A stretch of 64,000 nucleotides of DNA from contig NC_052160.1 of the NCBI RefSeq assembly GCF_902713615.1, forward strand, positions 130,919,738-130,983,737, in the 5' to 3' direction. The notes beneath the pieces were generated by a model. It was not told where the DNA came from. It made no database searches and saw only the letters and a program-made list of their open reading frames with translations. This DNA comes from Scyliorhinus canicula. Its lineage: Eukaryota. A program made the translations under genes and the position numbers. Positions 5,802 through 64,000 of the stretch are shown here, piece after piece; within the stretch, counting starts at the first letter, position 1; each line of letters starts with the position of its first letter.

Positions 5802-6602
5802 CCTGATTAGATTCCAGTCTGCAACTCATTCCAAGATTTGTTATTCTTTATATAAACCACTCAAACCCTTTAATTAGATCCCATCCTGTAAGTCACTCCT
5901 GGGTATGTAATCCTATATATAAACAGCCGAACCCCCCATTTAGATTCCAGCCTGGAACACACTCTTGCATATTTATGACTAAATATATAAAGCTACTGAT
6001 TACATCCTGTGACTCAGCTCCAATTATCCTTTGGACCATATTTAATTGTGGAGTAAAACGTGTGTTGCTTTTCCTGCCAACCGATCCTTTGTCACAATGC
6101 AAGCTGGATCAGAGATCAATGTATCGATGTTCTCGCCATTCTGATGTGTCCTCTCGCTGCCCTTGTTTTAGATTAGAAAACTGTGATTTAACATTCACTG
6201 TCTGTTCTTGGGGCTGCAACAGGCCCTCCTTGTTGCTACACAAGAACAAGAAAAAACCTTACAGCTACAGCCAGTAAGGAATCCTGTTCCACTGTCAAAA
6301 TTCACACCATAAAAAAACCTAAGAGAAAGGAGCATGGGGGCGGCCAGAGGGCCCTTCAACCTGTTCTACCAATCAGCAAGATCATGGCTGAACCTGACCT
6401 CACCTCTTCCTTGCTCAACCCCCATGGTTCCCATAAAGTCCAAAAAAATCTATAGATCTCAGCCTTGAATATATTTAATACTCGAACCTGCACAGTCCTC
6501 TAGAGAATTCCAAAGATTCGCAACATTCTGGGTGAAGATATTTCTCCTCATCCCAGTTCTAAGTGGCCAGCACCTACCCTGTCAAACCCTCTCAGGTTTT
6601 AC

Positions 6603-7341
6603 GGGCGCGATTCTCCCAGACAGGGAGTAATCGTAAGGCTGGCGTCAAATCCGGGCGGGTTTGACGCCAGCCTCCCCCTCCCCGACCGGGAACCGATTCT
6701 GGTCCCCGGTCGGGGCTAGTATGCCGCGGCCGTGAACTCCGGCATCGCGGGCTTAATGAATTTCGTTAAGCCCGCTTGCCAGAGTTTGCGCCGGCTGACG
6801 CGTCACATGACGTCAGCCACGCATGCGCAGATTGGAAGACTCCAACCCGCGCATGCGCCGACGACGTCATCGCGCATTTGCGCGAAACCCGCGCATGCGC
6901 AGTCCGGGATGCCCCTCAGCCGCCCTGCGAAGTGATACAGCGGGGCGGCGGAAGGACAAAGAGTGCGCGGGAATCGGACCTGCTGACCGCGATTGGTGGG
7001 CACCGATCGCGGGCCCATGGCACCCTTGGCACGGCCGTGGTACTGCCGTGCCAATCGGTGCCATGGTTTTCAAAATCGGGACTTTACGGCCGTTTTTACG
7101 AACGGCCAGACCAGGTGTGTTTGCCGTTCGTAAAAACAGCCGTAAAGGGCTTGGACTTCGGCCCATCGGACAGCTGAGAATCGCTGCTGGCCGTAAAAAA
7201 ACGGCGGCAGCGATTCGTGTCAGGAGTCGGGCGTGGGGGGGGGGGGGGGAGAATAGCGGGAGGGCATCAGACTAGAGTGGCCGTAAAAATTTACGAACCC
7301 CGCTATTCTCCGCACCGTCGTGAGTGCGGAGAATTGCGCCC
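6603..7341. mobile_element. Harbinger-type MITE
   Basis: TIRs gggcgcgattctcc / ggagaattgcgccc; perfect 3-bp TSD TAC. Confidence 0.92.
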
Positions 7342-25353: not shown

Positions 25354-25387
<34 letters not shown>

Positions 25388-25656
25388 GTATGCAGAGTGC
25401 ATCGAGTTCTGATTGCTGAACGCAGCATCTCCACGGCCATTGAAAACATTTCCTTTGGTAAGGCCACACTTGGAGCACTGTGTTCAGTTTAGATCTCCTA
25501 ACCTAAGGAAAGACATACTTAGCTAAGGTGGAATGCAACAAAGGGTTCACTACATCGGTTCTTGAGATGAGGGGATTGCCTTATGAGGAGAGATTGAGTA
25601 GAGTAAGTTCCCTCGAGTTTAGAAGAATGAGAGGAGTTTTAATTGGAACATATAAA

Positions 25657-32955: not shown

Positions 32956-33226
32956 ATAAAAGGTGCATTTATTTTTTTTTTTGATTCCCCTCCCCCCACC
33001 GTGTTGACATTTCACTGCGCACCACTCTAATTAGTAATTTATTTGCTCATGGTCCCAATGTCCAATTCCTGCCCGAATTAAGAGAATCTCACAGCTTCTG
33101 AGCACAAAGTCTCAACTGTTGTTTGTCCGCTTGTGAAACCTGTTAGATGCCGACAGGTTCAGTGGCAGTTAACCCGCGATTGCTGTGATAGGTTTTCCTT
33201 ACTTGAGTCGCCAACTCTCTCCTGGA

Positions 33227-33566
33227 GGGGCTGGTTTTGCACACGGGTCTAAATAGCTGGCTTTTAAACCAGACCAAGGCAGGCCAGCAGCACGGTTCAA
33301 TTCCCGTACCAGCCTCCCCGAACAGGCGCCGGAATGTGGCGACTAGGGGGCTTTTCACAGTAACTTCAATGAAGCCTACTTGTAGGGGCCGGTTTAGCAC
33401 AGGGCTAAATCGCTGGCTTTGGATGCAGACCAAGGCAGGCCAGCAGCACGGTTCAATTCCCGTACCAGCCTCCCCGAACAGGCGCCGGAATGTGGCGACT
33501 AGGGGCTTTTCACAGTAACTTCATTGAAGCCTACTTGTGACAATAAGCGATTTTCATTTCATTTCA
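33227..33566 (+). mobile_element. Head-to-tail dimer of the short tRNA SINE (33227-33383, 33385-33566)
   Basis: Two near-identical units; only the second has the (TTTCA)n end. Confidence 0.93.
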
Positions 33567-34091
33567 GTTCCGGCGTTGCCATGGAGAGTCTTATTAAAAG
33601 ATTACTCTGCTGGGCAAGGATGGTTGAGGAATTGAAAATAAGAAAGTTTTCTTTGAACGCTTTTATTGATTGCTAATGCAACTACCGGAGCAAGGCGCCA
33701 TTTTATTGGCTGGATCAGCTAAGTGGTGAAACTAGGGCTGTCGATCCTGTGGGATTGGCCTGGAGTCTCCATTTTGGGGGGGGAAACTATCCTCCTGAAC
33801 ACCACTGTAAGCGACTCAATAGTTAGAAAACTTGGCAATGGCAAATTCATTTTTAGGACTGAGATTCAGTTGGATCAATTAAAAGTCTTTCCGCTTTCCA
33901 GTTGATCGTGTGAGGAAAGGGCATCCGTGGGTACGGGGGGCCAATGGTGATGACTATTGTGGGTTGTGGTTGGAGGCGATGAAACCTCCAAGAACGCGTC
34001 CATCTAGAACGAGCAACCCGTATGTGTTGTGATAGGGTGCAGGAATGTCGAAGAGAAGCCTGGACCACGGGAGGTGCCAATGTAGTAAATG

Positions 34092-41105: not shown

Positions 41106-41426
41106 GGGCGGGATTCTCCTACCCCCCCCCACCAGGTCGGACAATCGCTGGGGGGGGGGGGGGGGGGGGGGGGGGGGCGTGAATCCCGCCCTGCTGACCT
41201 GACGTCAGCTGCCGAATTCTCTGGCGCCAGGGTTTTGGCAGGGGCGGGAATCGCGCCGCGCGGGTCGGGGGCCGCTGCTAGCGGCCCTCCCCCCCGGGGA
41301 TTCTCCGGCCTGCGATGGGCTGAGCGGCCGCCCGTTTTCGGCCAGTCCCACAGGCGTATATCAAACCGCATGCCACTCCTCGGCGCCGGTGCAGCCCCCC
41401 CCACCGGTTAGTGGAGAATCCCGCCC
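41106..41426. mobile_element. Short Harbinger-type MITE
   Basis: Perfect 14-bp TIR GGGCGGGATTCTCC; long G-run; TSD not evident. Confidence 0.88.
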
Positions 41427-42152: not shown

Positions 42153-42384
42153 GGAGTGTTGACAAAGAACATAAAGCTATATGTTTAAATCAAAGCTTTT
42201 CAACACTAATTGTTACATTATTACAAGTAACACTAACGTGTTACATTATTACACTACTTGAAATGGTTCACACACTCCACTGATTAACAGCTAACAAAAT
42301 AATAGTATTGAATCTATGTTGCAGTAATTAATTATCTCACTTTAATATAACCTACACTCTAACTCGCCCTCACACTATCCTTCC

Positions 42385-42567
42385 AGGGGCTGGTTTAGCA
42401 TAGTGAGCTAAACAGCTGGCTTGTAAAGCAGAACAAGGCCAGTAGCACAGGTTCAATTCCTGTATCAGCCTCCCCGAACAGGCACTGGAATGTGGCGACG
42501 AGGGGCGTTTCACAGTAACTTCATTTGAAGCCTACTTGTGACAATAAGCGATTTTCATTTAATTTCT
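42385..42567 (+). mobile_element. Short tRNA-derived SINE
   Basis: Same family as 33385. Confidence 0.88.
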
Positions 42568-43459
42568 TCATCAACTTCTCCAACAACTTCTCCCAGAATA
42601 CCTAGAGATGCAGCCTTTTGTAAGGCTACTCAGTGATGCCATCTAGTGTTGATATACATGAACATCATCTCCTGAAATTATACATATCATTACACAGAGA
42701 GCCGGTGTGAGCAAGGAGGCCTCATTCTGTGCTGTGGCAATTTTATGATTCTACCATTCAATGGTGAGTATAATGTGCTGGTGAAGAACAGGTGACTTTG
42801 GATCTATGGTTCCCACCACAGCAAATTTTCTGCACCTATATCTGGGTGTGTTGTGTCCCTCATTGGGCAGGATTATCCGGCTCCGTCATTGTGGGACCCG
42901 AAACAGGGGATGCAGCCGGCCAGCCGAAAGTCCGATAAATTGCAATGGGACCGGAAGATCCCAGCGGTCGACTGGGCTGGAAAATCCCGGCTATTAATAC
43001 AGATTGATCAATGTGATTAATCGATTGAAGTATGTTATGATCAGGAATAGAAGGTGGACATTGGGCTCAAAAGGAGGCCATTTGGCCCATCCAATCTTTG
43101 CTGGCTCTCTGAAGAGCAACTCAGTCAGTCACATTTCTCTGTTCTATCTCTACAATTCTGCAAGTTTATTTCCTTCATATGCCAATCCAATTTCTTTCTG
43201 AGATAATTGATCATCAAGCTGATGACCAAAATCCCAGTTGTTCCCACAAGATTCCACCCCTGAGTGTTTTTCAAAGCTTTACCTGTCTACTACTTATGAG
43301 AAATTGGAGGAGGGATCAGTACCATGGATGAGGGAATTCAGTAAAGCTGAGAGACTAGGTAAAGTGGGATTTTCCTCCTCTGAGCAGTAGAGGAGCATTT
43401 AACACAGGTTGTCACAGTGGTGAAACACCTGGAAAGAGTAAATAATGTAAAACTGTTTC

Positions 43460-47936: not shown

Positions 47937-48879
47937 CGTTCTGCTCATGTTGCTGTTTGTGGGAATTTGCTGTGTATAAATTGGGTGCCATGTTTCCTAT
48001 CTCACAACAGTGATGCACTTCAAAATTACTTCATTAGCATTAAAGTAATTTGAGGTGACCGGAGTTGCTATCTAAATGCAGGTTAATGTTTTTTAGGCAT
48101 ACTACCCTCAGGCATGCATCCTGAGGAGCTACATTCCATCTTATTAAGGCTGTAAGATGTATCTAAAATATTGACAGTCTGTGTGTATTTAATGAATGAT
48201 CCAGCAAAGCTTTGTGACCTTTCTTGGGCCATGCGCTGATTGTATCAAAAACTATTAACCTTCGACCAAAGCAGTACTTTCATGGAAATCACAAGATGGA
48301 AACAGACCATTTGGCCCTGTTAGTTCACTTTGTTGTTAACCTTGAGACATTTTATATATTAACGCTGCTATATAAATACAAATTATTTTTATGAAAACCC
48401 ACTGCACCACACCACTCTGCCAGGTTACTTTGATTCAAATGATTCTCTCCCTCATTGGTCTCCCTGCGGCTGACTGTAAATGGCCTCCAGCAATACTGCT
48501 CCAAATCTAAACAACAATATTGAATTGACTCCTTCACTTCTACGTAGCACCTTTCACTAACTCAGGACGCTTTCCCCCTCTCTCAGCAATCCCTCCGTCT
48601 GCTCGATTGGACAGTACATTTCTAGTACATTCAGTCGTTGTGTGAAATGCAATGACTTAAACCCACCAGTCGGTCCCTTTCAGGAAACAAGGACTCTTCG
48701 GGTCATGAATGCAAGTTCAATTACGTCATGGGACAACCTTTGAGCTCTTACCTTAATACCCCAAATATTGTCCAACTATTGTCCTGGCCACAGGGATATG
48801 CATCATTATTGTTCTGTTTGCCCCACTGTGTCTCTGCTTCGGTAATGTATCAAGAGCTCCAGTTCTATATTTTCTATTT

Positions 48880-49160
48880 ATTCTTTCATTCACTGGATGC
48901 GGACTTCACTGGTGAGACCATTGCCCATTTCTGATAATCCTCAAACCACCTTCTTGAACTGTTGCATTCCTCAAAAGTGAAGATGCTCCCATAATGCTGT
49001 TAGGTAATGTGTCCCTGGATTTTGACCCAGGGCCAATGAAGACATGGTGATATACCTACAAGTTAGGGTGGTGTGTGACTTAGAGGGGAACTTGGTGATG
49101 TTCCCATGCGCTGTTGCCCTTGCACTTCTAGTTGGAGGTGATTGCAGGTTCTGGATAAAT
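48880..49160 (-). mobile_element. Old CR1-clade LINE 3' end
   Basis: Matches 14752-15050 (ccttcttgaac, ggattttgacccag, gtgacttagagggga). Confidence 0.7.
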
Positions 49161-49850
49161 GTACTAGTACAATGGAAACTGCTCCCAGGGTTACGGTTAG
49201 CTGAGGATCATAGAGTCACTGAATCCCTAGAATGCAGAAGGAGTCCATTCGGCCCATCCAGCGGGAGGTTGCTTCTACGTCAACAAGGAAGTAAATAACT
49301 CATTCAGTCGTTGTGTGAAATGCAATGACTTAAACCCACCAGCAACCCCGCTCCCCAACCTCCCCTCCTTCCCCGAGAGGCAAGAGTGCTACCTACTGGA
49401 ATAGTTCCGAGGATACTTTGCCGTTTGTGTAACCTGGACTGTTTTTCCTCAGTACTGTTTAAAGCAATTATTGGTGGGTACTTGGTGAAACTCTCCTTCA
49501 TTCCATTGCATTTCTTACCTTGCTTAGTGGGCAAAAGATCCCAGGAGAAACGAGAAAGTTGAAAATAAATAATTTATATATATATCATATATATATGTAA
49601 AATTAGAGCAAATGCCACCTAACATTTCCCATGTCACCTCATGCCCCCTCAGATTCCCCATGCCGCCTCACATTCCCTGATGCCTTCTCACATTCCCAAT
49701 TCGTTCTTGATGCCCCACCCCTATGTATCCTCCATTAGAACATAATCAGTATGCACGATATGTAGTTTGCAGGAGCCATTAAATAGCCATGGGAATTATT
49801 GGGCAACTATTAAACCACTAAAAATCTAAGAAATTGAATAGAAACTCACG

Positions 49851-50185
49851 ATCATAGAATCCCTACAGTGCAGAAGGAGGCCATGCAGCCCATCGCAACG
49901 ACACCGACCCTCCGAAAAAGCACCCTCCTAGGCCCCTCCCTGCTCTATTCCCCGCAACCCCGTAACCCGAGGTGACCTACACAGCAGTGGACACGAAGGG
50001 GCAATTTAGCATGGCCAATCCACCTAACCTGCACATCTTTGGAGACAGGGGGAAAATGTACAAACTACAGTTACCCACAAGGCTGGAATCAAACCTGGGT
50101 CCCTGGTGCTGTGAGGCAGCAGTGCTAACCACTGTGCCACCCTGCCGCCCCCATATGTGCAAACTCCACCCAGACAGTCACCCAA
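49851..50185 (-). mobile_element. HE1-type V-SINE with internal deletion and small duplication
   Basis: Part of the V-domain is missing; caaactccac.cagacagtcaccca recurs after the head. Confidence 0.85.
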
Positions 50186-50285
50186 TGTCATTGATACTGG
50201 ACCAAAAAACACAAGTGAAAATAGTCGTAATCCTTTGAGTGCCTATTAGGTTTGTAAACAAACAAGAAACCACATCAAAAACATG

Positions 50286-50502
50286 GGGTGGGGTTTTACC
50301 GCCAGGCCCCCACCCCCGGGGACATGTTTGCTCGTGGGAGAGAGTGCTCACCATTGGGTGCCGGTGGGATGTTCTGATCCTGCCACAGTTTATGCTGTTT
50401 TGCATGGCTCGCATGTCACATTTCCAGGGAACACGCCACAGGAGGTCAACATGAGTGGGATCGGAATATCTCGCCAGTGGAAAGAGCTGGGAAATCCTGC
50501 CC
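50286..50502. mobile_element. Short old MITE
   Basis: Ends gggtggggttttacc / ggaaatcctgccc; flanks atg/ata. Confidence 0.6.
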
Positions 50503-50777
50503 ATAATTTGTTGTTAAAGGCTTCTAAATGTTTGAATCATTCTTAGATCGACAAAATCAGCTGTAGAGTTGAAGCCTTTGAAACCCAGTAGAACGAAGAG
50601 GTGTGGGAGACGATTCATGTGGAATACAGACACCAGTGTGGACCAGAAGTGTTGAATGGACTGTTTCTGTGCTGGAATTGCTATGTAACTTCAGAACAAT
50701 TGGTCCTGAGTTGATCCCTGATGCGTGTCAACTGTTGCCAAAGAATATGTGAAGAAATTACCAAAATTCAATACTAT

Positions 50778-52525
50778 GGACGAAATTTAATAATAATAAT
50801 AATAATCGCTTATTGTCACAAGTAGGCTTCAATGAAGTTACTGTGAAAAGCCCCTAGTCGCCACATTCCGGCATCTGTTCGGGGAGGCTGGCTCATTTGC
50901 TGGAGGCACTAATCCCATTATGACTGCTAAATCTTGTGAGAGGGCCATATTGGGATTAGCGCCGGAGGGATCTTTCGGTTTGAGAACTCCCCCCGCCCCC
51001 CCCCCCCCCCCCACCCCACCAGTGACATGATGGGCGTAACCTGACTTCCACAAATTTATATGCATTTACATATCATTAAAGTGCTTAATGCTCTTCCTTC
51101 CGGACCCATTGAATGCCCCCCCCCCCCCTCCCTCCGTGCGGGTGTGATGTCATGCCGGCAGGAATCGCTACTGGTTTGAAAATGAAAATCAGTTGTTATC
51201 AGGGGCGCAGAGGAGAGTATGGTTCCTAGATGCTGGGCGACATGGGACACGGCCCCCTGGTACCCTGGCAGTGCCAATGTAGCAGTGGCAACGTTGCAGT
51301 GCCAGGTTGGCAGTGCTAGGGGAGGCCTCTGTGGATCCCTGTTGGGGGTAGGCTTTCCCTTATATGTGAGGGGAGGCCCAATGTTTGGTGGGGAGGTTGA
51401 TTGTGCCTGTATTGGGGTAGAGGGAGCGGAGACCGTTAAGAGGGGGTGGGCACGGAGACCGTTGGGGGGGGTGACCCGGTTCCAGCAAAGTTGGGTGGGG
51501 GAGTCGGGTCACCCTGATGCATGCATGGTGTGATAGGGTGCTCCTATCTTAGAATGGTGGGGGGGGAGGGAGGGGGGGGGGGAGGGGGGGGGGGGTGGGG
51601 GTGGTGGGTGAGGGTTGGGGGCATTTCCCTTGTCTCTCAGGGCTCCGGATGTCCGTGGGTGTGGGATCCCCGTGCCCATGGTGGGGGGATGGGGGGGCCT
51701 CTAAGTTAAATTTGAGATCGGGGTGCCGGTTAGAAAAGAGAGAAACACACCGGTTTTCGGTCAGAATCTAAATCTTTGGGTGCAATCTTACTGCCTCGCC
51801 GCGCTCAATGTAGCCAGAGGCACTGCCAGGGTGGCAGTACCAGTGTATCCAGGCACTGCCAAGGGTTGGGAGCCTGAGTGGGACCATGCCCATGAATGTG
51901 GGTAGGGGTGAGGGGGTTTGAAGGGTGGGTGGTCACCCCTCACTGCCAGGTCACCCTTCACAGCCACACATAATGCAACCCCCAGCCCCACCATCCCAAA
52001 ACACTGTCCCTGACACAGGTTGGCACTGCTCCCAGCAGGGTTTGGCACTGCCCCGGCACAGGTCAGCATTGCTTCAAGTGCAGGTCGGCACTTCCAGGTT
52101 TAGGCAGGTTGGCACAGTGGCAACCTGGCAGTGCCAGCCTCTGCCAGGGGCACTGCCTGGGCATGTCCCTCTCCACCCGGGTGTGATAATTACCTTGGCT
52201 ACCCCAGGCAGGGATCCCTTCGACTGTCTCCCGTCCTCTCAGAGCTGTTGTGAACCTCGTCGACGCAACGTCATGTCGGCGAGGTTTCAATATTCCCTGA
52301 GGTGTGGGGTGGGGGTAACCATCCGGCCTGGAGGCCTTTTAATCACAATTAAATTCACTGAGATGGATTCAAGGGCGTGAACCTCGTTACAATACCGGAG
52401 AAGGACAGAGGAAATCGGGAAACAAGATCCCGCCAACAAGAAACCCATTTCCTGACTCTCGTGAGAATTTGGGTCCATGTCGCCGTTCCCACTCCCCGGC
52501 GAATGGAGGAGCAAAACCTCCGTCA
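50778..52525. mobile_element. Two adjacent old Harbinger-like MITEs rich in GGCACTGCC/GGCAGTGCC, with a SINE tail at 50790-50892
   Basis: Blocks taaatcttg.gag.gg and ggcactgcc are shared with 1389-2070; junction near 51778 (gggtgcaatctta). Confidence 0.55.
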
Positions 52526-53089
52526 TTATTATGCACAATACGCCATTCAACTCAACCTCCTGCAGTAAGTGCATTGTGAACACAATAAGGCTACTCTACC
52601 TGGAATGCACTGTGCCAGGAAAGAGGGGCGGTGTGTAAATATGGTGGACGGGATTCTCAGCCGCTCGCCCTCTGCGTGTCCTGCGGTGACGGAGATGGCT
52701 CCGCCCGATAACTAAGGCTGAATTTGAGCACAGCTCACAATTTAAAGGATAATTTTACCTTTGGCCTATCCCCAGGTGACATCCCCGGGGGGAAGTAGAA
52801 AATGGGCAGCACTGCGTGCTTTTATTGTCTTTTGGATCATTGATTTTGGCAAAAGAAATCACACTTTAAGCTTGGAAAGGTCAGAAATTTATCTTTAACA
52901 TGCTGTGCTGCCTGTACACAAAAAGAACTGGCTTGAGCTTGTTCTGTTGCACAGCACATCAGTCTCCAGTGGAACCGTGAAATGTGCCCCCCTGGAACAC
53001 TTACACATAATAATTAGTACCTAGCTCTTTACAGATAATGCAACACTGTAGAACAGACAGTGGGTCCAATGTTGTCCAACCTTGGTTAC

Positions 53090-53600
53090 CTCTAGGCTCC
53101 ACTCTTGGAATGCTCCACTGGCTGGCCTTCTATCTCTGTAAGCTTGAGAGTATGCATAATTCCGCTGTTCCTTTCTGACCTATCACAAGCCCCTTTTACG
53201 CGTTACCCTCTGTGACCCACATTGGCTCCTGATCAGGTAATGTCTAAATTTTAAAATTCTCACCCTTGTTTCCAAAACCCTCCATGGCATCACCCCTCCC
53301 TAGGTCTGTAATATCCTCCAACTCTCCAAGAGCTCTGCCTCTTGAATATTCCTGATTGTCATCGCTTCGCCATTTGCAACCTTGCCTTCTGTAGCCTGGT
53401 GCTTAAGTTCTGGGATTCCCTCCCTAAATCACTCCACCGTTAATTCCTCGTTAAGATGCTCATTAAAACCACTTTGATCAAACTTCTGTCACCTGTCCTG
53501 AATATCTCCTTACATGGGTTGACGTCAGATTTTGTTCGGTAACATTGCCGTGAAGCACGTTGGGATGTTTTACTGCGCTGAAGGTGCTAAATTAATGAAT
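53090..53600 (+). mobile_element. L2-like LINE 3' end
   Basis: Colinear with the reverse complement of 47020-47600. Confidence 0.75.
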
Positions 53601-54411
53601 GTTATGCACTATTGTTGAACGTCAAATTAGTCAGTTTCTGTTACCTATTTTTGGATGTTTTTCAAGAAAAGTTACGAGAAAAATCAATGTTACGATGGGG
53701 TGGGTGGAGAAGTCGACGGGGAGTGGGTGAAGAGAGAAATTAGAGCTCAAAATCTAGGGCAAATTTGGAGAGAATTAACAAAACATTTTTTATTATTATT
53801 TTGAAAATTGCTAAGCTTCAAGAAATCAGTAAGAGTGTTAACATGGAACAATTAAGCTAAATGATAACCTGCAATTATTTAGACAGTTCAGACACACCAC
53901 ATTAATGGCCCTCAGTGGCAGCTCTAAATGTAATGTAATATCAGTTTTGATCATTGCAAAATATTGTCAAGCTATTTCCAGGTTTAAAATACATTTATAG
54001 TCCTTATGAATAGACTGAAAAGTGGGAAAAGTTCAAATTGAAGTAGCTGATCATCACCCATAATATGGTGGAGCAGAAAAGTTTTATTAAAATCTGCCTA
54101 AAATATGAAATAGTTATTGCTAAAGTTTAATTTCGCAATTATGCACTATCAACAATCTTGTTCAATTACTGTCCAAAGTGTCATCATTTTATTAATAACA
54201 TTGCTATATTATTATAGTACTTCCGGCATGCATCCTGACATCCCAGTCATAGTAGACACGCTTCTCCAGTCTGGATTGTTGGCCAGAATTCCTGGGGTAA
54301 ACAGTGGAGTCTATATATAAAACCATGGAACCCTACAGCAGAGAAGGAGACCAAACAGTCCATCAGGCGATGCTGGTTCTTTGAATGAGCTATCGAATGA
54401 TGACCATTTTC

Positions 54412-55485
54412 GACCTGGATTTTCCGAGGAGTAATCATCATTTCTCCTCCCACTCCATATTTCTTGCCGGGTCTTCCAAAGGCCAGCTTTCCCAGAAAGG
54501 CGGAGCACAGCATTCCCTCCTGGAGCTCAGTTGCAGCACAGTAATGTTGGTGACAGGGGATGGTGGGGGGGGGGGGGGGGGGGGGGTGAAGATGGAGAGA
54601 GGGGTGGACATAACCCTTTTTACAGCTCTAGCGGTCGTACGTTAAGTTTAAAGGTTGATTTGAATGTCGGTGAATGGGTGAGTGGGTGAATGGGTGAGTG
54701 GGCGGTTGGGTCACTGGGTAGGGTGGACCAGTGGTTGTTGGGTGAGGTACGTGAGTGGTTGGGTAAAGTGGGGGAGGTGATAGATGGATGACGCGGCTGG
54801 TGAGTAAAGTGGTAGATGGATGGAATGGCAGGTGGTTGAGGTGGGTAGGTGGGTGAGATGGTATGCGGATAAAGTGGAAGGTGGGTGGGCTGGGTGGGTG
54901 AGGTGGGTACGTGGGTCAAATGGTACATGGATAAGTGGAAGGTGGATGAGCTGGGTGGGTGATGTGGATAGGTGGGGGTTGTTAGATTAGGGCGGTGGGC
55001 TAGTCAGGTTGGGTTCCGGAGTAGTTGGATGGTGGGTGTAGTGTGTTTGGGAGGAGTAGTGGGGGTGGCAGGGATTGTGGTGGAGGCAAGGGGTTTTTTG
55101 TTTGGGAGTCAAGGGGCTAATTTAAGGATTGAGACATTGTGGGGCAGTCAGCGGGTCAAGGGGTGAGTTGGGGGACCAAGGGGTAGATCTGGTGGTTTGG
55201 TTGTAAATTACCCAGGAGTTAGACTAGGATTCTTCTGTCTATCATTTCCTGGGGAACTATCCAGGGTGAGTAGCTCAGTATGTCAGAACTGTCCGAAGTC
55301 TCTGACTCTAACTCAGAGTTGCCAACATTTGTGGAGGGTCCCGGGGAGCAGGGAAATTGCCCTTCGGAAATTGAAATGTCCTGGGCAATTCTCATGGAGT
55401 CAGTGCATCAGGACATCCGCGGGGTCCAGAAGCGCATTTTGGGGGTTATGTCCGAATGTCCGATTTCCGATGACCCAGAGACCTT
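54412..55485 (+). repeat. Unclassified dispersed repeat with GGGTGA/GGTGG tandem region
   Basis: G-rich array at 54660-55190 followed by a block shared with 13590-13850. Confidence 0.5.
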
Positions 55486-56199
55486 TGGGCCATTTGCACC
55501 TGATTTACTTTATCAAAGCCCCTCTTAGTTTGAAAGCCATTAAATCTTTCCTAAACCTCTCCACTGTAAAGAAAAACTCCAACGTCTCTGGTCTGTTTGC
55601 CTTTTGTAACTTTCACAAGGGAAATTTCTGGTGAAAACTCCATTGATTTATTAAAGAGCAGTTGCCATTCTAACTGTGAACAGTTCAGTTTACTCAAATT
55701 AAGGATCAGACCTGGAACCTCCTGGTCTTTACAAATTCATTAGTAACTGAATAAATTCTCTGGGCTGCCTGGGAAGCCTCTCCACTTTGTTTTATATATT
55801 TGTGGGGCAGTACAATGTATTGTGTGGCATGAACAACTGACAGGGTAGATAACTAATCAGTTTAACCCTCATAGCTGATCTGTATCCTAACTTGATCTAC
55901 CTGCCTTGTCTCTCTATTATTCCTTTATACTCTGGGTATACAAAAATCTATCAATCTCAGATTTAAGAGAAATTGAGCTAGCATCTGCTGTTTTTTTTGT
56001 GTGGGAGGGAGTTTCACATTTATACAACCTTTTATATGAAGAAGTGTTTCTGAACTTTTCTCCTGATAGGTGTGGTTCTGATTTTGTTATATCCCCTTCG
56101 CAACCAACAGAAAATATGTCTCTCCAGCTACCACATCAATTCCTTTCAATATCCAAGAAGCGTTTAATCAAATGTTGAGTGTATGTAGTCGCGCCTCAT

Positions 56200-56520
56200 G
56201 ATCATAGAATCCCTTCGGCATTGCAGGCGGCCATTGGGCCCATCGGGTCTGCACCACCCTCTGAAAGAGCACCCTACCTAGGCCCCCTCGCCCTCCCCAT
56301 CCCTACAACCTCACATGCCTACCTTTGGACACTCAGGGGTAATTTATCATGGCCAATCCACCTCACCTGCCCACCTTTGGACTGTGGGAGGAAGCTGGAG
56401 CACACAGAAACCCATGCAGATAGGGGGAGAACGTACAAACTTCACACAGATTGTCACCCAAGGTTGGAATCAAACCCAGGTCCCTGGAACGATGAGGCAG
56501 CGGTGCTAACCACTGTGCCT
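56200..56520 (-). mobile_element. HE1-type V-SINE
   Basis: Head, V-domain and tail. Confidence 0.88.
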
Positions 56521-58420
56521 CAGTGCCTCTGCTGGGTCCCTGGTTATATTTTAGTGTGAGGGGACCAAGATCACATATGTATATTTTTGTAATATATATA
56601 TATATATATATATAAAAATATCCTCAAGGATAGTTCTAAAACTTTCAAAACTTGACAAAGACCTTTAAAATGGCTGAATCTTTGGCTCTCTGTGACCCCC
56701 TTGAACAAGAGAAACTGCTTGGCTTTTACAGGGAAGCTTGCTCATTGTTATCTCTGCCGGAGCCACTCGCGACCTGTTGTGGACTACACAGGCCAAATGC
56801 AGACAGGATTAAGTGCTTTCCAATCACCTCCCTTCATGGTTGAGTGATTTTGAAGTGGTCAGCTTGAAATGAACAGCACTTAACTCTGTTTGAAGTGGAC
56901 CAGGAGCTGTCAATCAAAGCTTGATTCTTATAAACAGTGAGGTTAGAGCACTTCAGAATTACTCAACCGTGAAGTGAGATGAATGGAACAATGCTGACAG
57001 CTGTGTGTATGCGTGTAGTAGCTGTCAATCACAGCCTAGTAAAATCAATATCAAAGTGAAATGAATGAATGGCTTGCAAATCAAACATCTGAGGGCATTT
57101 AAACACAGCTGACTGGTTGTCTCTTTCCAGGAATTGATAGGTGCAGCGTCCTCTGCCTGAGTCAGCAGGTGTATGGCCCAGGTGAGTTTTTTCTCTGCCT
57201 CTGTCTGGACTGCTCTCTAGCTTCCAGACAGGAGTTTCTCTTCTGGTTAACTTCCTGACAGGAGTCTCTTTTCTGCGGGCGGGGGGCGGGGGGGTCTACG
57301 GGGGATTTCTGTATTTAAGGGTCTCTGTGGGGGGGATCTCTATTTAGAGGGTCTCTGGGAGGGTCTCTTTATTTCAGGGGTCTTTTGATTTAGGGAGTTT
57401 CTGGTGGTGGGGGGGGGGGGGGGGGGGGGTCCGGGGAGCTCAGTGCATTAAAGAAACTGAAAGACAGATGCCAAAAAAAACTGTAAAGTTTTCTGGCAGA
57501 GTCAAAGGTTTTAAAAAGAAACTTACAGAGAAAATAACCACGCGGAGCAAAAGCTATGGTTTGAAATTTAAAAAGGAAGGAACTTGCGTGAAAGGAAAAG
57601 AATTGCTGCCGTCAAAAAAGTTCAAAAGCTGAGAAAGAGGCAGGCGTTAGAAAGCAGCGCTGCAACTTTAAGAGTAAACAAAAAATAAATGCTTCAGAAC
57701 ATTCTGTACCTGCATTGATGCATTTGTTGCAAAATGCACCTGAATAGGGAAGCCGACTGTATCCTAGCAACTAAAGGCTGTGTGGGGGAAAAAAGATGAT
57801 CATGCAATCTTAAAGCGGCAATACCCTACAAGAGGTGATACACTTAAAGCTGAAATCACAGGAAGAAACAAACGGCTATGAACAGGAAAATTACAGAAAG
57901 CCCCAGATAGATGGCAACTCTCAAAAAAGGTCCACAGGTTGGAAATACCTCAAAGAAGAGGCAACAGTAGATCTCAATTAAGAGGCAATAAAGACCTCAA
58001 ATGAGAGGCAATAAAGATTCCCAGAAAGGAAACAAGGTAAAACCCCAGAAGGAGGGGCCCCGAAATACACCAAATGGCAGGCATAAGGGGGAGGGAGCCA
58101 AATGACCAAGTGAAGGGAAACCAAAGATATACAGAATGAAAATAAGTCTACTCTTCACCAGAGACAGACCTGGTCAATAGCGAAGCCAAAAGCATTTGGC
58201 TGAAGTTAAGACAAGTGGAAACGAAGGTTCGATTTGTGAAATGTACGCATTCTCAGAAGATACGCAGAAATTAAAGACCTCAAAATAAACTAGAAATAAT
58301 TGAACATCAAGATGGATCAGCAAAAAGAATGAAATCTCTGGAGAAGACATCAAAAACAAGATGAAATGGCTGAAGGTAAAATTGGAGAAAAACAGTTGTA
58401 AAATTTTACAGAATTATGTT

Positions 58421-58733
58421 AACATAGAACAGTACAGCACAGAACAGGCCCTTCGGCCCTCGATGTTATGCTGAGCAGTGTCCGAAACCAAGATCAAGCT
58501 ATACCACACCCTGTCATTCTGGTGTGCTCCATGTTCCAATCCAATAACCGATTGAAAGTTCCTAAAGTGTCCGACTCCACTATCACACAGGCAGTCCATT
58601 CCACAGCCCAACCACTCTCTGAGTAAAGAACCTACCTCGGATATCTCTCCTATATCTCCCACCCTGAATCTTATAGTTATGCCCCCTTGTAATACCTACA
58701 TCCGCCCGTGGAAATAGTCTCTGAACGTCCACT
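58421..58733 (-). mobile_element. CR1 (HER1-like) 3' end inserted in the SYCP1 copy
   Basis: Tail aacatagaacagtacagcacagaacaggcccttcggccctcga and peptide LLREWLGCG. Confidence 0.88.
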
Positions 58734-59052
58734 CGAAGAAGGAGAACTTAGTGAGACAATGGAGAATAAGCTGAATGACAGGAAAATGCAACTTGAAAAT
58801 AAGAACGAGTCCAGTGATGAATTGAATCAGGAGAATAAAAGTTTGAAGAAGGAAGCTTGGCAACAGGAAATTAACTGAAGAGGTAATAGCATTGAAATTG
58901 ACGCAGGATCCGCAATTCAGACACAGAAAGAAAGTGATTACAGAACAAGATTGCTCAAATGGTCTGGCTGATGGAAAAGCACAAGAACCAATATAATAAA
59001 ACGTTGGATGAAAAAGATGCTGAATAGAAATGCTGGAAAGAGAAGAAACATT

Positions 59053-59287
59053 GGCCGCAATTGTCAGGCCATTGCTGGTGGTGGAATTCTCTGATCCCAC
59101 CGGCAGTGCAGTCCCGCCTGTGGGTTTTCCAGCCGTGTGGGGTGGCTTCATTGGGAATTCCCATATTCCCATTGACAGCGGCGGGATCCGGCCACCAACA
59201 AACGGCCACCCCCCCCCCCCCCCCCCCCACCCCCCCCATCCCCCCACCGCGAGAAACATGCGACTGGGGGGCTGGAGAATCATGCCC
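59053..59287. mobile_element. Short MITE inserted in the SYCP1 copy
   Basis: Ends ggccgcaattgtc / ggagaatcatgccc; flanks att/act. Confidence 0.75.
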
Positions 59288-59392
59288 ACTACCACACATC
59301 CTAAGCAACAGAAACAGATGACAAAACTATTCCCTCACATGTGACAGACCGAGATTGTGAAAGAACTGTAACGACATATGACTGTGTTTTAT

Positions 59393-60000
59393 TGTGATAT
59401 ATGTGCCTTCGTGCATTATAGGATGGGAATAGAGGGATACGGACCCCGGAAGTCTAGAAGATTTTAGTTTAGATGGGCAGCATGGTCGGCGCAGGCTTGG
59501 AGGGCCGCAGGGCCTGTTCCTGTGCTGTACTTTTCTTTGTTCTTTGTTCTATTATATAAGGTGCTTGGAGAGGAAGGATCAACATGGGACTGGAGAGTGA
59601 CACCACCCAGAGAGTGATGCACGTAGTCACATGGCGAGAGAACAGCCTGGGACTGGACTCAGTAAACAGCTAGCCTGCATGGAACAGCTCCTTGCAAGAC
59701 CATACGTGGAATGGCACCTCGTATTAAGTACATAGTATGACATGGTGTCATAAGAGGAAACTTCGGAATTGGATCAAGTTGGATCCGTGGAATTATTGTC
59801 GCTAAGATTGGACCTCTGTCCCTACCAAGTGGACGTGGAGGGACAGATCCTTCGTAAACACGTGGACCACTTGAGGAGAAGAGAGATGCTGCAGCAGTCA
59901 GTGCTCCCATCAAGAAATGCTTTAGAACCTGTAAGCACCAAAGTACCTTGTCGACCTGTAGAAGACGGAACTGGTGAATCGTAGAAGCAAGTCGTGATGA
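59393..60000 (+). mobile_element. Internally deleted Gypsy element: LTR (59393-59742, with CR1 tail at 59420-59550), PBS and integrase C-terminus
   Basis: TG...CA LTR, PBS-like TGGTGTCATAAGAGG, then WIRGIIVAKIGPLS..YQVDVEGQILRKHVDHLRRR. Confidence 0.8.
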
Positions 60001-60015
60001 GCTATCTGGTTCATC

Positions 60016-60234
60016 AGGGGCTGGTTTAGCACACTGGGCTAAATCGCTGGCTTTTAAAGCAGACCAAGACAGGCCAGCAGCACAGTTCAATTCCCGTACC
60101 GGCCTCCCCGAACAGGCGCCAGAATGTGGCGACTAGGGGCTTTTCACAGTAACTTCATTTGAAGCCTACTTGTGACAATAAGCGATTTTCATTTCATTTT
60201 CATTTTCATTTTCACTTTCATTTCATTTCATTCA
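60016..60234 (+). mobile_element. Short tRNA-derived SINE with expanded (TTTCA)n tail
   Basis: Same family as 33385. Confidence 0.93.
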
Positions 60235-60663
60235 TGTTCAACTATCTGGGCCAGAGGAGAAGCCGTTATTGCAGTTCTTATTAACGTCAATCCTGTGGAA
60301 GCATTTCAGTAACTAAACTACAGTGCTCTGCAAGCAATAGAAAACCCCCTCAAAGTCTCAATTTATAGTTGTTCAACTCATGTATATAGGGCACAATTCT
60401 CCGTTCTGGAGACTAAGTGTTACTGCCGGAGTAGAATTGCTTCTGGTCTCTGCTAGTGCTAGGAGCGGCGTCCAAGAGCGACACACTCTCCTTTACCATG
60501 GGGTATGATGGGAGGCAGCTGGGGTGGAGGGTTCTGATGGAGGGCGGGAGGTCTGTGGAGGGGGCAGGGGAAGTCTGATGAGGGGGCGAGAGGGGTTTGA
60601 TAGGCAAGGGGCAGGACTTGCATTGTGGGGGGGAGGGGGCCTTATGATGGACTTTGGGGAGGC

Positions 60664-60905
60664 TCCTAATAATCTTTTATTATTGTCACAAGTCGGCTTA
60701 CATTAACACTGCAATGAAATTACTGTGAAAAGCCCCTAGTCGCCACATTCCGGCGCCTGTTCGGGTGCACGGAGGGAGAATTCAGAATGTCCAAATGACC
60801 TAACAGCACGTCTTTCGGGACTTGTGGGAGGAAACCGGAGCTCCTGGAAGAAACCCACGCAGATACAGGGAGAACGTGCAGACTCTGCACAGACAGTGAC
60901 CCAAA
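60664..60905 (-). mobile_element. Chimeric SINE, 5'-truncated, inside a MITE remnant starting at about 60389
   Basis: V-domain joined to the alternative tail. Confidence 0.88.
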
Positions 60906-61139
60906 CCGCAGTGATTTATAGAGAGCCACCTGGTAGTTTTATGCCCCAAGAAAATTACGCTGTTGCATGTTTACTGTGTACCCCACCCAGAAGTCCACTC
61001 TGTCCATATCCCCCTCCTCCCCAACTCAGCAGAGGCCTTCTCTTTGCCAATTATGGCTAAGTTCCACATTGGGAAGCTGGTGAATCAAGGGGAGAAACTT
61101 GAGAAAATAAGAAAAAGTATCAAGGATTTAGATCAAAGG

Positions 61140-61560
61140 GCGACATTGCATTTATATACAGCCTTTTCTGACCTTGGGCTTTACACTTTACAGCCAATAA
61201 AGGATCTTTTGAAGAGTTGGAATGTAAGAAACATCACAGCAATTTACACACAGCAGAACCCCACAAACAGCAACGTGATAATGAACTGATGATCTGCTCT
61301 GGTGATATTGGATGTGATTTACATTGTCCACGTTCACCTTTGCCTTTTTTTTTGAGGACGTGCCACTTGATCTTTTATGGCCCCCTAAGCAGCCAGTAGA
61401 GGCCTCATTTTCATGTCTCATTTGAAAGACGACAACTCTGATAGTGCAGCACTCCATCAGTCCTACATCAAAGTATTATCCTGGATCTTGAGCTCAAGCC
61501 TCTGGAGTGGGACTTGAAAGCAGAACCTTTTGATTCAGAACCAAGAGTGTTCACACTGTG
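61140..61560 (-). mobile_element. SacSINE1-like DeuSINE, near full length
   Basis: Reverse complement of the 29570 family, including the L2-like tail. Confidence 0.85.
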
Positions 61561-62319
61561 GTAATCATTGTAGAAATAGCAGGGAGAATAAAATAATGAC
61601 ATAGTCAATAGAGAAAACCAATCATTCTACTTCAAGACCAAATAACCTTGCATTGTTCATTTACAGATAATCAATAATTGATGTTGGAGCTTGTAATATG
61701 AATTGGCAAAATGACTTGTATGGCTGAACCATCCCCCCCCCCCCCCCCCCCCCCCCCCCCAAATACATCCCACTATTTAACTTGTAACAATTGACCACAA
61801 AGTGAGTGAAATCACAATGGAGGAGAAAGGGTTGCCGTTGTCTACGATTCGAATATTGAAACTTGATGCTGTTAAGCAAGAATTGGCTTTTGATGAGCCC
61901 CTAGCATTTCAGTGACAAAAGGTAGAGGTAAGGGGAAGCAGGTGTTTGATATTTTGCTGGTAGAAGGCCATGTTTCACTTGCTGAAAGCTGAGATAAGGA
62001 TGGTTCCTGCTGCATAAAACCCCGCATGGCTTTATTTAGTGTATTGAACATTTAGCATTCACTTGACGTGCCATGGAATTTGATGTTTAATACACGTTAA
62101 GAGCAGACAAAGGGATGTTACCAAACACACACATGTATGAAAATACTAATGTTGCTCCAATGCATGCTTTCATACAAAATGCAATAGTCCCAGACATACA
62201 TGTTATTCTTCTGCAAACATGTTGAGGTCACACAAACTGTCTGGCAAACACGCCAACACCATACAAGCATACGGGAAATGAATTTTCTTGAAGCTTTCCC
62301 ATTAACAGAAACATGGAAA

Positions 62320-63112
62320 CATATAAAATAGGAGTAGCAGCAGGCCATTCACCCCATCAATTCTGCTCTGCCATTCAAAGAGATCATGGCTGATCCTCTA
62401 TATCAAAGCCAAACACTCGCTCCCTCCTTATACCCTTTGATGCCAATAGTGTTTAGAGACCTTATAAGGTCTTTCTTAAATATGTTCAGTGATTTGATCT
62501 CCACAGCTTTCTTTGGTTGAGAATTCCACCTTCCAAGTGAAGAAATTTATCCTTATCTCAATCCTAAATGGCCTACTCCATACCCTGAGAAGTGACCCCT
62601 TGTTCTAGACTCCACCACCCCCCCACCCCCCTCCAGCCAGAGGAAACAACATCCCTACGTCCAGTCTGTCCAGCCCCATCAGAATTTTAAACATTTCAAT
62701 GAGATTCCATCGCATTCTTCGAAACTCCAGTGAATACAATCTCTCCTCACACGACAATCCTGCCATTCGAGGAATCAGACTGGTGAACATTTGCTGCACT
62801 TCCCCTACGGCAAGTATATATTTTCTTAGGTAAGAAGACCCAAACTGCACATAGTAGTCCAGGTGTGGTCTCACCCAGGCTCTGTAAATTTGCAGTAAGA
62901 CATCCTTGCTCCCGACTGAAATCCTCTTACAATGAAGACCGACCTACCATTTGCCTTTCTAACTGCTTGCTGCACCTGCATGCTTGCTTTCAATGGCTGG
63001 TGTACAAGGACAGCCAGGTCCCTTTGTACATCCACATTTCCTAATCTATCTCTATTTAAATAAAACTCTGCCCTTCTGTTTCTCCTACTGAAGTGGATAA
63101 CATCACACTTTT
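62320..63112 (-). mobile_element. 5'-truncated CR1 LINE
   Basis: RPHLDYYVQFGSSYLRKYILAVGEVQQMFTSLIP...EFRRMRWNLIEMFKI. Confidence 0.9.
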
Positions 63113-63874
63113 CAGGGCAGCATGGTGGCACAGTGGTTAGCACTGTTGCTTCACAGCGCCAGGGAACCAGAGTATGTTAAATGTACAAGCAATGTTTCCT
63201 CAGCTACCTTTGGACAAAGTCCTACACTTTTGATCTAATTCTTGGAGGATAAAGGTTATATTAGACCATGTACTCACATATTCCATCGACTTTCCTAACT
63301 TTGTACCCAGCTGTGAAGATTCTCTTTCAATCTCACTGACTCAAGTTAATGTTTTATGTCCTGTTAATCCAAAATTGCGATGATGTTTGACTCAGATCCA
63401 TCCAATGCTTGTGTTGGAAGTACAAACAGACTCTCTGTTCATCATCACTTGGTACATATTCCCTTACCAATTTACCATATTTTGCTTTATAGTTTGCCCT
63501 CTGTCACGGGTGGATATTGCTGCCAATCCAGTAGGGAACAGGGAATCTACTGCAATGGAAACAAGGGACAGAATGTTCCTGAGAAGCACTGTCAGAAATA
63601 TATTGCTGTTGTGAGCCTGACATCAAAGATCAGCATCTCTACAGGATTGTGTAGGATTCTAAAACTATAATGAAAACATGATTACATTGTGATCCGAATA
63701 ATAAGGAGGACATTCGCTTTTGGTGGCAGTGTCAAAGTGAGTGATGGTGAATAATTCACCTATTTTAGACCGTATTCCATTATATTTTCTATTGCCACGC
63801 CATAAGGAGTGGAACATACACTTACTTGAATGATACTTGGATTCCGAGGTTAAACTATGTGCAGAGAGCAAACA

Positions 63875-64000
63875 AATTAGGCTTGAAGCTCTGAAAGTTT
63901 AGATGGTTAAGGGATGATTTGATTGAAATTTTCAAGATATTGAAGGGAACAGATGAGGTAAATAAAGTGAAACTATTTCTGCTGGTTGGGGAATGTAGGG
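63875..64000 (+). mobile_element. CR1 RT fragment running off the window
   Basis: KFRWLRDDLIEIFKILKGTDEV motif. Confidence 0.75.

What the first reader, a model, noticed from the sequence alone, without database searches (positions are those of the whole stretch)
57450..59390. Hidden intronless SYCP1 retrocopy missed by the ORF track
Seen: hand translation of the A-rich plus strand gives colinear coiled-coil pieces. These are KMIMQ..IHLKLKSQEETNGYEQENYRK (about 57790-57900), EIKDLKIN and KMKWLKVKLEK (about 58265-58390), MENKLNDRKMQLENKNESSDELNQENKSLKKE (58759-58854), KLTEEV..AIQTQKESDYR, QNKIAQMVWLMEKHKNQYNKTLDEKDAE* (58941-59027), and possibly DDKTIPSH (about 59315-59340). Knowledge: they follow the order of recalled vertebrate SYCP1 segments, and SYCP1 is a multi-exon meiosis-specific gene. 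Inference: contiguity without introns means germline mRNA was retrotransposed, then decayed through deletions and CR1 and MITE insertions. It would record the germline SYCP1 transcript of this lineage, or be a once-functional retrogene.
Basis: partly seen in the sequence, partly recalled or inferred. Interest (0 to 1): 0.8.

Follow-up and report, generated by a model that had tools for sequence, protein, structure and literature searches.

The report
Decayed SYCP1 cDNA fragment, many copies
This shark-like genome holds a dead, intron-free scrap of the meiosis gene SYCP1, but it is one of dozens of similar copies of a repeated unit, not a lone retrogene, so it is a fairly ordinary piece of genomic debris with one mildly unusual feature.

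Summary
Partly confirmed. About 300 nt (58750-59048, + strand) derive from SYCP1. Two pieces hit Pfam SCP-1 in the right order (E 3e-5 and 3.5e-7). Read with X at two breaks, 58912-59048 aligns without gaps to human SYCP1 residues 695-742 (E 1.2e-11, 26 of 48 identical). That alignment crosses one frameshift and one in-frame TAG. Distant parts of the protein lie 87 nt apart with no intron, so the source was cDNA, and the copy is dead.

No tool supported the upstream pieces (57450-58420). 'DDKTIPSH' straddles the edge of a later insertion and is not SYCP1.

The new result concerns copy number. Contigs from public runs show 18-53 distinct copies, 80-90% alike, over these segments in the same species, and more in two relatives. 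These copies lack this locus's three TE insertions. They share the point where SYCP1 homology stops (59049) and the non-SYCP1 sequence after it, which leads into an integrase-tail-like remnant. No poly-A tail or target-site duplication was found. The best reading is a chimeric cDNA fragment, made once and then amplified. It is neither a lone retrocopy nor a former retrogene.

The scan's first readers noted four other 'SYCP1-like retrocopies' elsewhere in this genome. Interest is low to moderate.

The parts
57441..58420 (+). A-rich upstream part of the repeated unit.
   Evidence: Base composition matches the verified part (A 43%, C 16% against A 45%, C 12%) and AT skew is 0.33-0.5. It is multi-copy at a lower level: 4-18 contigs over 57610-58152 and 21-38 over 58174-58315. 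One other copy joins 58330 to 58735 without the CR1 insertion (table 5c). No Pfam SCP-1 or PDB SYCP1 match was found for the pieces tested.
58421..58733 (-). 5'-truncated 3' end of a very abundant CR1-like LINE, inserted later into this copy.
   Evidence: Depth is 1e5-1e6 and hundreds of contigs end at 58421. The minus-strand ORF ends in ..FFTQRVVGLWNGLP, and tblastx finds a relative at 18673-18825. The element is absent from another family copy (table 5c). The CR1 label rests on my knowledge of LINE tails; Pfam was blank.
58750..58857 (+). SYCP1 piece 1, in the frame of 57451.
   Evidence: Pfam SCP-1 PF05483 profile 589-624, E 3e-5. At 58807 and 58818 this copy's residue differs from human SYCP1, as I recall the human sequence, while 24-27 other copies carry a letter that gives the recalled human residue.
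58868..58944 (+). SYCP1 piece 2. KLTEEVIALKLT is in the frame of 57452, then AIQTQKESDYR in the frame of 57451. The two are split by a frameshift near 58902.
   Evidence: AIQTQKESDYR aligns to human SYCP1 695-705. Six other copies (five contigs in X1, one in X10) have one more A after 58902 (table 4). About 46 codons of the Pfam profile (624 to about 677) are missing between pieces 1 and 2. Contigs that bridge this gap show other copies share the shortening (table 8, records 6, 8, 14).
58941..59048 (+). SYCP1 piece 3, in the frame of 57450, with an in-frame TAG at 59025-59027.
   Evidence: Pfam profile 699-726, E 3.5e-7. PDB 6f63 positions 32-67, 35.9 bits when read through the stop. Joined with piece 2 it scores 47 bits, E 1.2e-11.
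59050..59331 (.). Later insertion of an unclassified element bearing a poly-C tract. It is private to this copy or a subset of copies.
   Evidence: Nine X1, four X10 and one X15 contigs join 58993-59049 directly to 59329-59335 (table 5). The flanks read AAACAT and AAACTAT.
59332..59385 (+). Shared non-SYCP1 sequence that follows the SYCP1 fragment in other copies too.
   Evidence: The joints listed above continue 28-43 nt into it. The PDB alignment gains nothing from it. A content drops to 33%.
59386..59568 (+). Later insertion that contains a second CR1-like 3' end (59418-59550).
   Evidence: Five X1 contigs and one X15 contig join 59360-59385 to 59569. It is 90% identical, in reverse orientation, to 58421-58461.
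59569..59950 (+). Shared downstream segment with a remnant resembling a retroelement integrase C-terminal (SH3-like) tail at about 59700-59900. This assignment is a lead only.
   Evidence: Contig counts of 8-39 resemble those of the SYCP1 part. Two contigs join 59049 to 59722. Atlas feature hits were IN_DBD_C, MLVIN_C, Integrase_p58_C and SH3_Tf2-1 at 0.76-0.87. Pfam and PDB were blank.

Best explanation
Window 58750-59048 (+ strand) is a dead, intron-free fragment of SYCP1 coding sequence, equivalent to human residues of about 597-742. It is broken by at least two frameshifts and one in-frame stop.

It sits inside a repeated unit of about 1.7 kb (about 57441-59950 once three later TE insertions are removed). 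That unit is present in dozens to more than a hundred copies, 80-90% alike, in this species, and it also occurs in two related species.

Many copies share two features: the point where SYCP1 homology stops, and the unrelated sequence that follows, which appears to carry the tail of a retroelement integrase gene. I therefore infer this history:
1. A piece of germline SYCP1 mRNA was reverse-transcribed once into a chimeric copy, probably by reverse-transcriptase template switching between SYCP1 mRNA and a retroelement RNA.
2. That chimera was then multiplied as a passenger of a mobile unit.
3. The copy in this window was later hit by two CR1-like LINE fragments and one other element.

It does nothing now.

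Shown: SYCP1 homology, the breaks, the absence of introns between distant protein segments, multi-copy status, the private insertions, and the shared 3' junction.

Inferred: a single chimeric origin, the mode of amplification, the integrase identity, and the SYCP1 origin of 57441-58420.
For: SYCP1 identity:
- Pfam SCP-1 hits in colinear order.
- A gapless 48-residue alignment to human SYCP1 695-742 across a frameshift and a stop, E 1.2e-11.

No introns:
- Profile positions 624 and 699 lie 87 nt apart.
- Vertebrate SYCP1 genes have 24-33 introns in transcripts of 2.5-3.4 kb (PMC5803294, Table S1).

Many copies:
- 18-53 distinct X1 contigs carry the same alternative letter at 57900, 58193, 58818, 58887 and 59002, in a data set that holds only 45% of this locus's words.
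- Listed paralogous contigs differ from this copy by 9-20% (table 8).
- Four other first-reader notes describe SYCP1-like retrocopies in the same genome.

Shared 3' junction:
- 14 contigs from three data sets join 58993-59049 to 59329-59335.
- Six contigs join 59360-59385 to 59569.
- Two contigs join 59049 to 59722.

Homology ends at 59049:
- The PDB alignment does not extend past that point.
- A content falls from 45% to 30-33%.

Age: the orthologous copy is near-identical in organism B (1-2 differences in 151 nt) and 97% identical in organism C.
Against: - No other copy could be fetched, so the ends of the unit, its flanks and its target-site duplications are unknown.
- Contig depth is not a copy number.
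- Copy counts are uneven along the unit: 57404-57706 and 58010-58110 are nearly low-copy.
- The integrase assignment rests on a language-model lead (0.76-0.87) and my memory of the motif. Pfam and PDB were blank.
- No LTR-like direct repeats flank the region.
- The shared downstream sequence could instead belong to an alternative SYCP1 transcript.
- No tool supports SYCP1 origin for 57441-58420.
Confidence: 0.6

Rival explanations
1. There were many independent LINE-mediated retrocopies of an SYCP1 transcript that is abundant in germ cells. The transcript may be an alternative or aberrant isoform whose 3' part is the shared non-SYCP1 sequence. This locus is one such processed pseudogene.
For: SYCP1 is germline-expressed and has produced retrocopies repeatedly in mouse, amphioxus and Ciona (PMC5803294). 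Copy counts tend to rise from 5' to 3' across 57400-59050, as expected from 5' truncation.
Against: All bridging contigs share one breakpoint at residue of about 742, followed by sequence that is not A-rich. About 230 residues of C-terminal coding sequence are missing, as are a poly-A tail and a polyadenylation signal. Counts do not keep rising over 59600-59950.
Confidence: 0.2
2. One reading: a single processed pseudogene, or former retrogene, of SYCP1 spanning 57450-59390.
For: Confirmed intron-free SYCP1 pieces with later TE insertions.
Against: Dozens of paralogous copies exist. Only about 300 nt are verifiably SYCP1. There is no start codon, C-terminus or poly-A tail. The last claimed piece lies across the edge of an insertion.
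Confidence: 0.05
3. The resemblance is only that of a generic coiled coil. The region is a LINE ORF1 or another K/E-rich protein, or simply A-rich DNA.
For: The DNA is 43-45% A, and every frame reads K/E/N-rich. The upstream pieces and the atlas control returned only generic or no matches.
Against: In PDB, SYCP1 chains are the only matches below E 0.01. Pfam returns only SCP-1, at the right profile positions and in the right order. Identity is 54% over 48 residues in SYCP1's conserved C-terminal coiled-coil end.
Confidence: 0.05
4. These are genuine exons of the SYCP1 gene or of a paralogue.
For: None beyond the homology itself.
Against: There is an in-frame stop, and frameshifts lie inside continuous homology. 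Segments 75 profile positions apart lie 87 nt apart with no splice sites. The sequence is multi-copy.
Confidence: 0.02

Closest known systems
Mouse Sycp1-ps1 and Sycp1-ps2 processed pseudogenes (Sage et al. 1997, as cited in PMC5803294)
   Same: These are intron-free copies of the germline SYCP1 mRNA. Sycp1-ps1 is likewise old, mutated, carries deletions and is silent.
   Different: The mouse has one or two copies. Here dozens of copies share an internal 3' breakpoint and a non-SYCP1 tail, and no poly-A tail was found.
SYCP1 retrogene replacement in amphioxus and Ciona (PMC5803294)
   Same: An SYCP1 cDNA was inserted back into the genome.
   Different: Those copies are intact single-exon working genes. 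This one is a broken internal fragment.
Chimeric retrocopies made by reverse-transcriptase template switching (the U6-L1 type), and host-gene fragments carried and amplified by retroelements. From my own knowledge.
   Same: A host cDNA fragment is fused in the same orientation to unrelated, apparently retroelement-derived, sequence. The junction is shared by many copies.
   Different: The partner element, its ends and the amplification mechanism were not identified here. No LTRs were found.

Membership tests
SYCP1 (Pfam SCP-1, PF05483) | Significant sequence match to the family profile. | tested here: met
   Scores were 29.1 bits (cut-off 23) at profile 699-726 and 22.7 bits at 589-624. Against human SYCP1 in PDB the E-value was 1.2e-11.
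SYCP1 (Pfam SCP-1, PF05483) | A full-length open reading frame with the N-terminal region, the long central coiled coil and the C-terminal tail. | tested here: not met
   Only about 100 codons are verified. They are broken by frameshifts near 58860, 58902 and 58944 and by a TAG at 59025. No match was found to N-terminal structures or to the C-terminal continuation.
Processed pseudogene (retrocopy) | No introns: segments from different parental exons lie contiguous. | tested here: inconclusive
   Profile 589-735 is packed into 300 nt with no intron-like spacer. Vertebrate SYCP1 has 24-33 introns with a mean exon of about 100 nt. Exon junctions could not be mapped because no shark SYCP1 gene could be fetched.
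Processed pseudogene (retrocopy) | Includes the 3' end of the mRNA with a poly-A tail. | tested here: not met
   Homology stops at residue of about 742. No A-tract or polyadenylation signal follows.
Processed pseudogene (retrocopy) | Target-site duplications flank the copy. | tested here: inconclusive
   The 5' edge abuts a poly-G tract at 57403-57430 and the 3' edge lies near 59950. No matching short repeats were seen by eye.
Host fragment carried by an LTR retroelement | LTR direct repeats around the unit. | tested here: not met
   A self-BLAST of 48000-64000 found no flanking direct repeats.
Host fragment carried by an LTR retroelement | The host-to-element junction is shared by many copies. 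| tested here: met
   14 contigs join 58993-59049 to 59329-59335, and two join 59049 to 59722. The retroelement identity of the partner sequence is only a lead.
LINE ORF1 protein | A match to ORF1 domain families such as Transposase_22. | tested here: not met
   No such Pfam hit appeared for any + strand piece between 57300 and 60100.

The most novel reading that the evidence does not exclude
A fragment of the synaptonemal-complex gene SYCP1 was fused to a retroelement tail in an ancestor of these elasmobranchs and then spread to more than 100 copies as a new composite mobile family. If some copies are transcribed in the germ line, they could supply antisense or small RNAs against SYCP1 itself.
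Probability: 0.3. Interest if true: 0.5.

Novelty: new member of a known kind. Interest (0 to 1): 0.3.

Why it matters
SYCP1 retrocopies are already known in mouse, amphioxus and Ciona, so one more dead copy adds little. The multi-copy status is the part worth noting. Non-mammalian vertebrates generally carry few retrocopies (VGP preprint PMC13320880). A family of about 100 copies derived from one meiotic gene would be an outlier and a handy marker of past reverse-transcriptase activity in elasmobranch germ lines.

There is also a practical point for the scan. At least five first-reader notes in this genome probably describe the same repeat family under different gene names, so they should be merged and not scored as separate discoveries.

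Tried and rejected
- The search of protein representatives with the 46-aa SYCP1 piece returned 0 hits, so no full-length SYCP1 could be fetched.
- The search for homologous proteins with the 61-aa SYCP1 piece and with the 76-aa integrase-like piece found no candidate sharing words.
- Because of these two failures, a frameshift-aware alignment to a shark SYCP1 and mapping of exon junctions were not possible.
- The protein atlas failed its own positive control: the confirmed SYCP1 piece returned only generic coiled-coil families. Its blank result for the upstream piece therefore means nothing.
- Pfam on all + strand pieces of 20 aa or more between 57300 and 60100, plus three short X-joined read-throughs of upstream frames, found nothing except the two SCP-1 hits.
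- PDB searches on upstream pieces and on the sequence after the insertion found no SYCP1 match and no extension of the alignment.
- No second SYCP1-like copy lies elsewhere in the 64-kb window.
- No LTR-like direct repeats were found.
- No listed RNA run holds the exact words of 58734-59052, so none was listed. This is not proof that the locus is silent.
- My own matches of the upstream frames to human SYCP1, recalled from memory, were dropped as evidence. Two of them used the same nucleotides in different frames.

Full report
**1. The observation**

The stretch is strongly A-rich on the + strand, with AT skew of 0.33-0.5 from about 57450 to about 59050 and A at 43-45%. Any frame therefore reads as a K/E/N-rich 'coiled coil', and hand-made resemblances need a statistical test.

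**2. What is SYCP1**

- Pfam hmmscan placed 58750-58857 on SCP-1 (PF05483) profile positions 589-624 (E 3e-5).
- It placed 58941-59024 on positions 699-726 (E 3.5e-7, above the curated cut-off).
- The second piece matches human SYCP1 in PDB 6f63 and 4yto (31.3 bits).
- Reading on through the TAG at 59025, with X at the stop, raises the score to 35.9 bits.
- Adding AIQTQKESDYR from the neighbouring frame, with X at the frameshift, raises it to 47 bits, E 1.2e-11. This is a gapless 48-residue alignment to human residues 695-742 with 26 identities.
- SYCP1 chains are the only PDB matches below E 0.01.

So 58750-59048 derives from SYCP1 and is broken. The breaks are frameshifts near 58860, 58902 and 58944 and an in-frame stop at 59025.

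**3. Intron-free**

Profile positions 624 and 699 lie 87 nt apart, on one strand and in order. The intervening DNA is itself alignable coding sequence. About 46 codons of the vertebrate profile are absent. Vertebrate SYCP1 genes have 24-33 introns in transcripts of 2.5-3.4 kb, including 24 in elephant shark (PMC5803294, Table S1). About 150 residues of parental coordinates must therefore cross several exon junctions.

I could not map the junctions. No full-length SYCP1 could be fetched.

**4. What is not shown**

- Every + strand piece of 20 aa or more between 57300 and 58420, and three short X-joined read-throughs, gave no Pfam SCP-1 match. The four upstream pieces sent to PDB gave no SYCP1 match.
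- This includes the region where the conserved N-terminal motif, which is present in solved structures, should have been detectable.
- The central coiled coil of SYCP1 is poorly conserved, so this is weak evidence against an SYCP1 origin. It does mean the upstream 1 kb rests only on composition, strand and contiguity.
- 'DDKTIPSH' lies across the edge of an insertion (see section 5).
- After that insertion the PDB alignment gains nothing, and A content falls to 30-33%. Verified SYCP1 homology therefore ends at 59049, at about residue 742 of about 976.

**5. Copy number and anatomy from public reads**

Two independent samples of the same species hold the locus. Contigs of one DNA run of that species (X1), two related species (X9, X10) and one possible RNA set (X15) were laid on 57000-60000 at 80% likeness or better.

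*(a) The locus is real.* Near-identical contigs cover it and bridge the TE junctions (records 2, 3, 7).

*(b) Many other copies exist.* Many further, distinct contigs cover the SYCP1-like parts at 80-91% identity. Between 18 and 53 X1 contigs agree on a letter different from the window at each of these sites:

| Position | X1 contigs with the other letter |
|---|---|
| 57900 | 18 |
| 58193 | 38 |
| 58818 | 27 |
| 58887 | 32 |
| 59002 | 53 |

X1 holds only 45% of this locus's words. The same pattern appears in X10 and, more thinly, in X9.

At 58807, 58818 and 58887 the letter carried by the other copies gives the residue that I recall for human SYCP1. At 58139 and 58143 this copy has stops in one frame where the others have sense codons.

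*(c) Other copies lack this locus's three insertions:*
- 58421-58733, a CR1-like 3' end on the minus strand.
- 59050-59331, an element bearing a poly-C tract, flanked by AAACAT and AAACTAT.
- 59386-59568, which holds a second CR1-like 3' end.

*(d) Other copies share the sequence after the SYCP1 breakpoint:*
- 14 contigs join 58993-59049 to 59329-59335.
- Six join 59360-59385 to 59569.
- Two join 59049 to 59722.

Contig counts over 59600-59906 (8-39) resemble those over the SYCP1 part.

*(e) The copy is old.* Organism B has this same copy with 1-2 differences in 151 nt, and organism C with 5 in 151. Most listed paralogous contigs differ from this copy by about 16%, so the amplification long predates the split of these species.

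**6. The downstream partner**

The + strand of 59700-59900 reads like the SH3-like C-terminal tail of a retroelement integrase. I recall the GPLSY.V...G....R+H.D.LR pattern from memory. The atlas feature search gave IN_DBD_C, MLVIN_C, Integrase_p58_C and SH3_Tf2-1 clusters at 0.76-0.87, which is a lead only. Pfam and PDB were blank. No LTR-like direct repeats flank the region. A SINE follows at about 60016-60232.

**7. Reading**

The shared internal breakpoint, the shared foreign tail and the missing poly-A argue against many independent classic processed pseudogenes, and they argue strongly against a lone one.

The best fit is a single chimeric reverse-transcription product, in which a fragment of SYCP1 mRNA was joined to retroelement RNA, and which later multiplied.

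An alternative remains open: repeated retrocopying of an unusual SYCP1 transcript that carries this tail.

The uneven copy numbers along the unit are unexplained. 57404-57706 and 58010-58110 are nearly low-copy.

**8. Context**

SYCP1 retrocopies are documented in mouse, as Sycp1-ps1 and Sycp1-ps2. SYCP1 retrogene replacement is documented in amphioxus and Ciona (PMC5803294). Non-mammalian vertebrates usually carry few retrocopies (PMC13320880).

The scan's first readers logged four other SYCP1-like retrocopies in this genome. They also logged a 'mosaic SMC1B + SYCP1-like + RABGAP1-like' insertion and a 'CCDC158-like' intron-free pseudogene of similar length. I suspect, but did not test, that these are members of the same family.

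**9. Verdict**

This is a real SYCP1-derived cDNA fragment that is dead and interrupted. It is one copy of a multi-copy composite repeat. It is ordinary in kind and mildly unusual in copy number.

Noticed in passing
window 4014-5774 (-): A 586-codon open frame with no Pfam match. It is a proline/tyrosine-rich low-complexity repeat (PYPLPPYPPSP...), with overlapping open frames on both strands. It is probably a minisatellite and not a gene.
   Followed up: partly
window 57000-57302: A high-copy repeat, with summed contig depth of 5000-7000 in X1. It contains an exon-like 52-nt segment (57131-57182) bounded by ...tttccag and gtgagt.
   Followed up: no
window 57285-57430: A G-rich tandem motif of about 27 nt (GGGTCTCT..TATTTAGAG) runs into a 23-nt poly-G tract directly at the 5' edge of the A-rich unit. 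Similar poly-G or poly-C tracts recur at 25354-25389, 41148-41181, 51556-51604, 54556-54586, 59206-59248 and 61729-61761.
   Followed up: no
window 60016-60232, also 33226-33578, 19027-19232, 42375-42590, 50797-50891, 60680-60765: Several copies of one tRNA-like SINE with a (TCATT)n-type tail. The pair at 60107-60159 and 60713-60765 forms a 53-nt inverted repeat that is 96% complementary.
   Followed up: partly
window 58041-58271 (+), frame of 57450: In other copies of the family the two stops at 58139 and 58143 are sense codons, which gives a 77-codon open frame. Its first half has prolines and glycines and is not coiled-coil-like. This hints that this part of the unit may not be SYCP1.
   Followed up: partly
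run X15 laid on window 58111-59120 and 59626-60000: A data set guessed to be RNA holds contigs 80-90% like the unit, including one that skips the private insertion (59049 to 59329). If the set really is RNA, some family members, or the parental gene, are transcribed.
   Followed up: no
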